Below, piece by piece: positions 25,211-25,448 of a DNA stretch of 64,000 nt. Under the pieces are notes generated by a model, which had not been told where the DNA came from, made no database searches, and was given only the letters and a program-made list of their open reading frames with translations. The stretch covers positions 35,278,001 through 35,342,000 of the forward strand of contig NC_067403.1 of NCBI RefSeq assembly GCF_016432865.1, read 5' to 3'. Position 1 is the stretch's first letter, and every line of letters begins with the position of its first letter. Source of the DNA: Antechinus flavipes. Its lineage: Eukaryota. The position numbers and the translations under genes are program-made.

Positions 25211-25448
25211 GCCAAGAACAATTTATCTTATTTTAAAATTCTCTTTGGTTATGATATAAAAAGTCAATTAAAAAGTTTTCCCTTTTATTCCCTCTATTCT
25301 TCATAGGACTATACACTTACAATGTATTTGCCAAGAACAATTTGTCTTATTTTAAAATTCTCTTTGATTATGATATAAAAAGTCAATTAAAAAGTTTTCC
25401 CTTTTGTTCCCTCTATTCTTCACAGGACTATACACTCACAATGTATTT
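25211..25448 (+). repeat. 119-bp tandem duplication spanning the exon-4 splice acceptor (copies 25211-25329 and 25330-25448)
   Basis: Both copies run gccaagaacaattt...ggactatacact(t/c)acaatgtattt; 5 substitutions in 119 nt, all transitions. Confidence 0.95.

What the first reader, a model, noticed from the sequence alone, without database searches (positions are those of the whole stretch)
25211..25448. Duplicated GABRB1 exon-4 splice acceptor: a second intact AG 119 nt upstream that would create a poison exon
Seen: a 119-bp tandem duplication copies the whole 3' splice-site region (pyrimidine tract, AG and upstream branch-point zone) plus the first 23 exonic nt (DYTLTMY). The upstream copy keeps its AG (25305-25306, ttcatag|gactat). 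It differs at 5 positions, all transitions, so it is unlikely to be a read-stacking artefact. Splicing there adds 119 nt, and the frame reads [23 protein letters not shown] then TAA (25376-25378). Established: a premature stop far upstream of the last junction triggers NMD, and CAG is generally a better acceptor than TAG. Inference: the upstream copy is the decaying one (CAG>TAG, CTC>CTT), but it could still divert some beta-1 transcripts, as lineage-specific unproductive splicing or dosage tuning of a GABA-A subunit.
Basis: partly seen in the sequence, partly recalled or inferred. Interest (0 to 1): 0.7.

Follow-up and report, generated by a model that had tools for sequence, protein, structure and literature searches.

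The report
Duplicated splice acceptor before GABRB1 exon
A marsupial GABA-receptor gene (GABRB1) carries a 119-base tandem copy of the splice signals in front of one coding exon, which leaves a spare, intact splice site that would destroy the message if used; whether it is ever used could not be tested here.

Summary
A 119-bp head-to-tail duplication (25210-25328 and 25329-25447; 114/119 identical, 5 transitions, no indels) copies 96 nt of intron end plus the first 23 nt of a 221-nt exon (25426-25646). That exon encodes 73/73 residues identical to the GABA-A beta-1 subunit. Both AGs are intact (25305-25306 and 25424-25425). The two acceptors match at 21 of 23 positions and share the same upstream AG map and branch-point zone. 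Splicing at 25307 adds 119 nt, shifts the frame and gives TAA at 25376-25378, 268 nt before the exon's donor, which is a classic NMD substrate.

This is an alternative 3' splice-site extension, not a cassette poison exon. No outgroup shows that the upstream copy is "decaying". That copy even has a consensus branch-point motif at -20 that the working copy lacks. Survival of its AG is what chance predicts.

One DNA run holds all sampled words, which supports a real junction. Fixation in the species is not shown.

Most likely this is a tolerated duplication whose upstream site leaks some unproductive transcripts. Regulated dosage tuning is unlikely. Interest is modest.

The parts
25210..25328 (+). 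Upstream copy (A) of the 119-bp tandem duplication: 96-97 nt of intron end (branch zone, pyrimidine tract, AG) plus 22-23 nt copied from the exon start
25329..25447 (+). Downstream copy (B): the working intron end and the first 22 nt of the real exon
25305..25306 (+). Intact AG of the upstream spare acceptor (ttcatAG|GAC). Pyrimidine content over -20..-5 is 0.875
25424..25425 (+). AG of the productive acceptor (ttcacAG|GAC). Pyrimidine content over -20..-5 is 0.875
25426..25646 (+). 221-nt coding exon of GABRB1 (phase 0 start). It encodes [21 protein letters not shown]...LYGL(R), 73/73 identical to the beta-1 subunit
25647..25648 (+). GT of the exon's donor site (CG|GTATGT)
25307..25425 (+). 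119-nt segment that becomes exonic if the upstream AG is used. Composition is A+T 73% and G 9%. It contains no plausible 5' splice site
25376..25378 (+). TAA reached in the frame set by splicing at 25307, 268 nt upstream of the exon's 3' end
25287..25287 (+). A at -20 of the upstream acceptor inside TTTAT (perfect yUnAy). The working copy has G here (25406)
25268..25275 (+). Shared candidate branch zone of copy A (AATTAAA, A at -36). The identical zone of copy B lies at 25387-25394

Best explanation
This is a genuine, lineage-specific 119-bp tandem duplication with a 1-nt microhomology junction, typical of replication slippage or end joining. It straddles the intron/exon boundary of the 221-nt GABRB1 exon (exon 4 in the usual nine-exon numbering, from general knowledge).

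The downstream copy sits directly against the conserved coding sequence and is the productive acceptor. The upstream copy is a complete spare 3' splice site with its own branch zone, pyrimidine tract and AG. The 3' splice site is the first AG downstream of whichever branch point is engaged, and the two AGs are 119 nt apart. The choice is therefore made when U2AF and U2 commit to one of two near-identical branch/tract modules, not by AG competition at the second catalytic step.

The segment between the AGs is intron-derived, A/T-rich and G-poor, and the working site gives the shorter exon (221 versus 340 nt). I therefore infer that the downstream site wins most of the time. A minority of transcripts would splice at 25307, gain 119 nt, shift frame, stop at TAA 25376-25378 and be removed by nonsense-mediated decay.

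I read this as tolerated splicing noise from a nearly neutral duplication, not as an evolved regulator. Shown: the anatomy, the gene identity and the stop geometry. Inferred: the relative use of the two sites and the absence of an adaptive role.
For: Duplication and coordinates. Beta-1 identity of the exon. Frameshift and stop.

The acceptors are identical at 21 of 23 positions. Both have upstream AGs at -33, -45 and -92 and the same -36 branch zone. There is no usable GT between the AGs. The inter-AG segment is 73% A+T and 9% G. The stop lies 268 nt before the exon end (all).

[quoted passage not shown] Silencer-rich, enhancer-poor sequence between competing 3' splice sites represses the intron-proximal (upstream) site (PMC2095810). 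Identical repeated splice sites can stay silent next to the exon-adjacent one, as in the F7 IVS7 minisatellite (PMC1557585). An upstream duplicated acceptor can be used in vivo, as in a BRCA1 intron 9/exon 10 tandem duplication (PMC11839443).

Reality of the junction: run X1 holds 86 of 86 sampled words. With 30 junction-spanning words among 871, the chance that none was sampled is 4%. A 4.2% difference between copies is far above allelic variation, which argues against stacked haplotypes.
Against: Those RNA runs plateau at 19 of 86 words, about the share that lies wholly within the exon. That says nothing either way about a rare or NMD-depleted form.

The upstream site is not demonstrably weaker. 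It has an extra yUnAy motif at -20, and predicted accessibility is similar for both sites. It could therefore be used heavily.

The literature points both ways on which of two identical sites wins.

The second sample of the same organism (X2) holds 0.88 of the words. That is close to the 0.86 expected if one copy were missing, so fixation is unproven.
Confidence: 0.55

Rival explanations
1. Inert relic. The duplication is real, but the upstream acceptor is essentially never used (under about 1% of splicing events). Exon definition pairs the donor at 25647 with the nearest acceptor, and the intron-like 119-nt segment acts as a silencer.
For: The F7 IVS7 minisatellite shows identical repeated sites staying completely silent beside the exon-adjacent one. 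Silencers between competing 3' splice sites repress the upstream site. The inter-AG segment is G-poor and U-rich. RNA contigs of related organisms hold about the exon's words only. A duplication old enough to have 4% divergence has been tolerated in a conserved receptor gene.
Against: The upstream module is a full copy of a constitutive acceptor with identical tract and branch zone, plus an extra branch motif. In the BRCA1 duplication the upstream acceptor copy is used. Contigs cannot show the absence of a rare, NMD-depleted isoform.
Confidence: 0.25
2. This is lineage-specific regulated unproductive splicing: the upstream acceptor is kept by selection to divert a controlled share of beta-1 transcripts to NMD and so tune subunit dosage.
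For: The geometry is right for splicing coupled to NMD, and the spare site is intact.
Against: An intact AG is expected by chance after only 5 substitutions in 238 nt. There is no sign of constraint on copy A, no regulatory element specific to it, no RNA data and no cross-species data. New duplications of this kind are normally neutral or mildly harmful.
Confidence: 0.07
3. Assembly artefact, or a private or polymorphic allele of the sequenced animal rather than a feature of the species.
For: Earlier notes of this scan list many intragenic tandem duplications in this assembly, some of them perfect or 99% identical (unchecked). The second sample of the same organism holds 0.88 of the words, close to the 0.86 expected for a single-copy allele. 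X1 may be the very sample that was assembled.
Against: X1 holds every sampled word, and with 96% probability these include at least one junction-spanning word. Five differences in 119 nt (4.2%, 95% interval 1.4-9.5%) are far too many for two alleles stacked by error. They imply an old event, which should be fixed. The array sits in the middle of ordinary sequence, far from the N runs.
Confidence: 0.08
4. Non-productive decoy. The upstream module binds U2AF and U2 without completing splicing, and so slows removal of the upstream intron or promotes skipping of the 221-nt exon, as described for decoy 3' splice sites.
For: Decoy 3' splice sites are a documented regulatory element, for example In100 of caspase-2 (PMC2082412) and decoy exons driving intron retention (PMC6097662), both listed. 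The upstream module has all the signals.
Against: Known decoys depend on added repressor sites or on their position. Nothing here prevents the second step at the upstream AG. Skipping a 221-nt exon would itself shift the frame. No data are available.
Confidence: 0.05

Closest known systems
Alternative 3' splice-site use coupled to nonsense-mediated decay (unproductive splicing, AS-NMD)
   Same: A second acceptor upstream of the productive one would extend the exon, shift the frame and place a stop more than 55 nt before a downstream exon junction.
   Different: Use of the site is not shown. No conservation or regulation is known. It arose in one step by duplication, not by gradual exonisation. 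It is not a cassette 'poison exon'.
Human F7 intron 7 37-bp minisatellite spanning the exon 7/intron 7 boundary (PMC1557585)
   Same: A tandem repeat whose unit straddles an exon-intron boundary reiterates an identical splice site. It is a natural test of how the spliceosome picks one of several identical sites.
   Different: That case is on the donor side, with 5-9 copies of 37 bp and the extra copies lying in the intron downstream. There only the exon-adjacent site is used. The mechanism proposed there (5'-to-3' scanning) would, if it held for acceptors, favour the upstream spare site here.
BRCA1 tandem duplication of 395 bp of intron 9 plus 1617 bp of exon 10 (PMC11839443)
   Same: The geometry is the same: a tandem duplication across an acceptor, so that an intron end lies inside a longer exon. 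[quoted passage not shown]
   Different: That is a human disease allele. Its upstream copy carries 1.6 kb of true exon with its enhancers, whereas only 23 nt are copied here. No allele-specific quantification was done.
Decoy 3' splice site of the caspase-2 In100 element (PMC2082412)
   Same: An intronic sequence with all 3' splice-site signals that is not the productive site.
   Different: In100 lies downstream of the regulated exon and works together with PTB sites. Here the spare site is an exact copy lying upstream of a constitutive exon, and no function is shown.
Intron birth by tandem duplication of an AGGT-containing segment (Hellsten et al. 2011, PMC3265369)
   Same: A short intragenic tandem duplication copies splice signals, which the spliceosome can recognise at once. 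Such alleles may spread nearly neutrally even with inefficient splicing.
   Different: In that case the duplicated GT and AG pair excises the extra copy and restores the frame. Here only an acceptor is duplicated, so the extra copy cannot be removed once the upstream site is chosen.
NAGNAG and other short-distance tandem acceptors
   Same: Two AGs that can both serve the same exon.
   Different: Those sites share one branch point and compete at the second step within about 12 nt. Here the spacing is 119 nt and each AG has its own branch zone and tract.

Membership tests
GABRB1 (GABA-A receptor beta-1 subunit) 221-nt ligand-binding-domain exon | Encoded peptide matches beta-1 better than beta-2 or beta-3 | tested here: met
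   73/73 identical to beta-1 chains (6dw0_E, 9ctv_D, 9oum_B; 158 bits). Beta-3 scores 153 bits and beta-2 150 bits. The margin is small because the exon is nearly invariant among beta subunits.
GABRB1 (GABA-A receptor beta-1 subunit) 221-nt ligand-binding-domain exon | Exon bounded by AG and GT, with the conserved length of 221 nt and a phase 0 start | tested here: met
   AG at 25424-25425, exon 25426-25646 (221 nt), GT at 25647-25648. That 221 nt is the conserved length for this exon comes from general knowledge.
GABRB1 (GABA-A receptor beta-1 subunit) 221-nt ligand-binding-domain exon | Neighbouring GABRB1 exons in order on the same strand | tested here: inconclusive
   Short peptide motifs recalled for the flanking exons found nothing in the six frames of the window. 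The introns are probably longer than the 25 kb and 38 kb of flank.
Tandem segmental duplication (real genomic event) | Head-to-tail copies in exact register with a defined junction | tested here: met
   Period 119, 2.0 copies, no indels, 1-nt microhomology.
Tandem segmental duplication (real genomic event) | The junction is supported by sequence data independent of the assembly, and is present in more than one individual | tested here: inconclusive
   X1 holds 86 of 86 sampled words, with 96% probability including a junction word, but it may be the source sample. X2 at 0.88 fits either a few SNPs or a single copy.
Unproductive splicing (alternative 3' splice site coupled to NMD) | The alternative site has a branch zone, a pyrimidine tract and YAG | tested here: met
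   It is identical to the productive site at 21 of 23 positions, with pyrimidine content 0.875, the same AG-free zone of 33 nt and the same -36 branch zone. MaxEntScan and SpliceAI are not available here.
Unproductive splicing (alternative 3' splice site coupled to NMD) | A premature stop more than 50-55 nt upstream of a downstream exon-exon junction | tested here: met
   TAA at 25376-25378, 268 nt before the donor at 25646/25647. The 50-55 nt rule comes from established knowledge.
Unproductive splicing (alternative 3' splice site coupled to NMD) | The alternative junction is observed in RNA and rises when NMD is blocked | not testable with these tools
No RNA run of the window's own organism was listed.
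Unproductive splicing (alternative 3' splice site coupled to NMD) | Conservation or regulation of the event (needed to call it a regulatory device) | not testable with these tools
The metagenome scan gave 0 hits.
Cassette poison exon | A separate exon with its own acceptor and donor, included between two constitutive exons | tested here: not met
   The five GTs between 25307 and 25425 have poor contexts (aat|GTATTT, ttt|GTCTTA, aaa|GTCAAT, aaa|GTTTTC, ttt|GTTCCC). The segment can only extend the same exon.
NAGNAG / short-distance tandem acceptors | Two AGs within about 12 nt that share one branch point | tested here: not met
   The spacing is 119 nt and each AG has its own branch zone. The rule is from PMC1431707.

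The most novel reading that the evidence does not exclude
The upstream acceptor is used at a substantial, tissue- or stage-dependent level. This dasyurid lineage would then have acquired, in a single duplication step, an NMD-coupled valve on GABA-A beta-1 subunit dosage, now held by selection. It would be a rare datable example of a regulatory unproductive-splicing switch born by tandem duplication of a constitutive 3' splice site.
Probability: 0.07. Interest if true: 0.6.

Novelty: new member of a known kind. Interest (0 to 1): 0.3.

Why it matters
If the spare acceptor is used, it is a natural experiment on a question that minigene work has not settled: how the spliceosome chooses between two complete, almost identical 3' splice sites set 119 nt apart at the end of an intron longer than 25 kb. 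It would also show how much loss of message a conserved neurotransmitter-receptor gene tolerates. If the site is silent, it is the acceptor-side counterpart of the silent donor copies in human F7. In both cases it warns gene annotators that the exon frame stays open upstream through the copy (mechanical ORF 25342-25734), so automatic models could pick the wrong acceptor. By itself, without RNA data, it is an ordinary structural variant in an intron-exon boundary.

Tried and rejected
After that, no letters of 25549-25595 were sent to any search tool, and all later work stayed beside them.

(3) An exact-pattern scan of JGI metagenome contigs, using a 32-nt stretch shared by both copies, gave 0 hits.

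(4) A search of the window for the neighbouring GABRB1 exons by short recalled peptide motifs found nothing.

(5) I tried to infer presence of the duplication from the share of words. It is useful only for X1. For X2 and the relatives the numbers cannot separate substitutions from a missing copy.

(6) Local RNA accessibility of the two acceptors shows only small differences in both directions and is not informative.

(7) I considered a mini-exon or recursive-splicing reading and rejected it. There is no usable donor between the AGs, and the junction at 25307 would not regenerate a GT.

(8) Literature searches for a systematic rule on duplicated acceptors gave single cases only.

(9) MaxEntScan and SpliceAI are not installed, so no scores from them are given.

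Full report
**What is in the sequence**

Positions 25210-25448 hold a two-copy tandem array with a 119-nt period. It shows 95% matches, no indels and a TRF score of 443. The copies are 25210-25328 (A) and 25329-25447 (B). The unit occurs nowhere else in the 64-kb window.

The copies differ at five places: 25225/25344, 25248/25367, 25287/25406, 25304/25423 and 25318/25437. All five are transitions and none is in a CpG context.

**What the unit contains**

Copy B ends 22 nt into an exon that runs 25426-25646. The exon is 221 nt long, is preceded by AG at 25424-25425 and is followed by GT at 25647-25648.

Its translation is 73/73 identical to GABA-A receptor beta-1 chains in the PDB (6dw0_E residues 81-153, 158 bits). 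Beta-3 scores 153 bits and beta-2 150 bits. The exon opens with a whole codon directly after the AG, so it starts in phase 0. That the 221-nt exon is exon 4 of the conserved nine-exon GABA-A subunit gene plan comes from general knowledge, not from a tool.

No neighbouring GABRB1 exon was found in the window with short recalled motifs. The flanking introns therefore probably exceed 25 kb and 38 kb. The N runs at 6647-6958, 42441-42809 and 56169-56423 were left alone.

**The spare acceptor**

Copy A reproduces 96 nt of intron end plus the first 23 exonic nt, including an intact AG at 25305-25306.

From -20 to +3 the two sites differ only at -20 (A in copy A, G in copy B) and at -3 (T in A, C in B). 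Both have 87.5% pyrimidines from -20 to -5. Both have upstream AGs at -33, -45 and -92, so both have an AG-free zone of 33 nt. Both have the same candidate branch zone around -36 (AATTAAA). Copy A alone has a perfect yUnAy motif (TTTAT) with its A at -20. Copy B alone has TTGAT at -59, but two AGs lie between that motif and the splice site. Predicted local accessibility differs little and in no consistent direction.

On sequence alone, the upstream site is therefore not visibly degraded. There is no outgroup to say which copy changed.

With about 2.5 substitutions expected in copy A, its two AG bases had roughly a 96% chance of escaping. The intact AG is therefore no evidence of selection. This is my own arithmetic on the counts.

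**Consequence if the spare site is used**

Splicing to 25307 adds 119 nt (119 = 3 x 39 + 2). The frame then reads DYTLTMY followed by 16 new residues and stops at TAA 25376-25378. That stop is 268 nt upstream of the donor.

By the established 50-55-nt rule, such a transcript is an NMD substrate. None of the five GTs between the two AGs has a usable donor context. The event can therefore only be a 3' extension of the same exon, not a cassette poison exon. No GT is regenerated at the junction, so recursive splicing is excluded.

**How the choice would be made**

[quoted passage not shown] AGs closer than about 12-15 nt to the branch are bypassed, and the nucleotide before the AG matters when AGs compete within about 12 nt (Gooding et al. 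2006, PMC1431707).

Here the AGs are 119 nt apart and each has its own branch zone and tract. The decision therefore falls at the commitment of U2AF and U2 to one of two nearly identical modules, and the C/T difference at -3 should matter little.

Context then decides. Sequence between competing 3' splice sites that is poor in enhancers and rich in silencers represses the upstream site (Kralovicova and Vorechovsky 2007, PMC2095810). The 119-nt segment is intron-derived, with 73% A+T and 9% G. The downstream site also gives the shorter exon (221 versus 340 nt).

Natural precedents point both ways:
- In human F7, identical donor copies created by a boundary-spanning minisatellite stay silent beside the exon-adjacent one (PMC1557585).
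- A tandem duplication of intron 9 plus part of exon 10 of BRCA1 gives cDNA that retains the duplicated intron piece, so the upstream acceptor is used (PMC11839443).
- A donor-spanning 75-bp duplication extended the exon in a minigene (PMC11919142).

My reading is that the downstream site dominates and the upstream site leaks. The size of the leak is unknown.

**Is the duplication real, and how old is it?**

A search of public runs with 25000-25900 used 86 sampled words of 871.
- One run of organism A (X1) held all of the words.
- A second sample of organism A (X2) held 0.88.
- Organisms B, C, D and E held 0.73-0.77, 0.63, 0.44 and 0.42.
- Three RNA or probable RNA runs of organisms E and F held 0.22.

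Thirty of the 871 words span the A/B junction. The chance that none of them was sampled is 4%, and about 12 sampled words need copy A or the junction. X1 therefore very probably contains the junction in its own contigs, although it may be the sample that was assembled.

X2's 0.88 equals the loss expected from about three SNPs. It is also close to the 0.86 expected for a single-copy allele, so fixation is not shown. The plateau at 0.22 (19 words) equals the share of words lying wholly in the exon (0.219). These RNA contigs thus seem to hold the exon alone. They come from other species, and contigs drop rare forms, so they say nothing firm about the extension.

The copies differ by 4.2% (Jukes-Cantor 4.3%, 95% interval 1.4-10%). 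That is far above allelic variation, which argues against a stacked-haplotype artefact and for an old event. Rough non-exonic distances derived from the word shares are 1.2% (B), 2.1% (C), 4.0% (D) and 4.3% (E). The duplication should therefore predate the splits from B and C. This is a prediction, not a result.

**What could not be done**

A metagenome scan with a 32-nt stretch common to both copies found nothing. No animal genome collection is available, so orthologous loci could not be aligned.

**Organism**

Earlier notes of this scan on other pieces of the same genome call it a dasyurid marsupial, the yellow-footed antechinus, and compare it with the Tasmanian devil and dunnart. I did not check this. 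It fits the pattern of runs, where one study covers organisms A and C and another organism has many population samples. Those notes also list many intragenic tandem duplications in this assembly, some of them perfect. This keeps a small probability on artefact, although the present array is 4% diverged.

**Verdict**

- Most likely (0.55): a real, nearly neutral duplication whose upstream acceptor leaks some NMD-bound transcripts.
- Next (0.25): the spare site is silent.
- Regulated dosage tuning (0.07), an artefact or private allele (0.08) and a non-productive decoy effect (0.05) remain possible.

This is a new example of known kinds, namely an alternative 3' splice site with an NMD outcome and a boundary-spanning tandem repeat. 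Interest is modest until RNA data exist.

Noticed in passing
window 25733-25784: A 15-nt direct repeat (gaaaattctaacgat at 25733-25747 and again at 25770-25784) flanks a 22-nt A-rich insert (15 A, then cagaaaa). It lies about 90 nt downstream of the exon's donor. It looks like a target-site duplication around a nearly tail-only retroposed insert, or like a second small tandem duplication. Seen and as the A-run.
   Followed up: no
window 25342-25734: The reading frame of the real exon stays open upstream through copy B's intron part (mechanical 130-aa ORF). The frame continues through the exon-like part of copy A in a different register. Automatic gene models could therefore mis-place the acceptor here.
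   Followed up: partly
window 12248-12496: Three tandem copies of an 83-nt unit (84-87% identical) lie in the upstream intron.
   Followed up: no
window 10113-10583 and 33078-33545: A dispersed repeat pair of about 470 nt, 86-90% identical, lies in the same orientation 22,965 nt apart on either side of the exon (families D2, D3 and D7). They are probably two copies of one transposable element. Direct repeats like these could mediate deletion of the exon by unequal recombination.
   Followed up: no
window 16741-16878 and 18357-18494: A 138-nt direct repeat, 84% identical, with copies 1,616 nt apart.
   Followed up: no
window 6647-6958, 42441-42809, 56169-56423: Three N runs of 312, 369 and 255 nt. 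None is near the duplication.
   Followed up: no
window 25000-25900 (run table): Three RNA or probable RNA runs from two other organisms and three studies all hold exactly 0.22 of the sampled words, which equals the share lying wholly in the exon. The 221-nt exon therefore seems identical at the sampled words across these species. One small run (X15) holds 0.30, so it has some flanking sequence as well. Whether that is the 119-nt extension, retained intron or captured DNA could not be told.
   Followed up: partly
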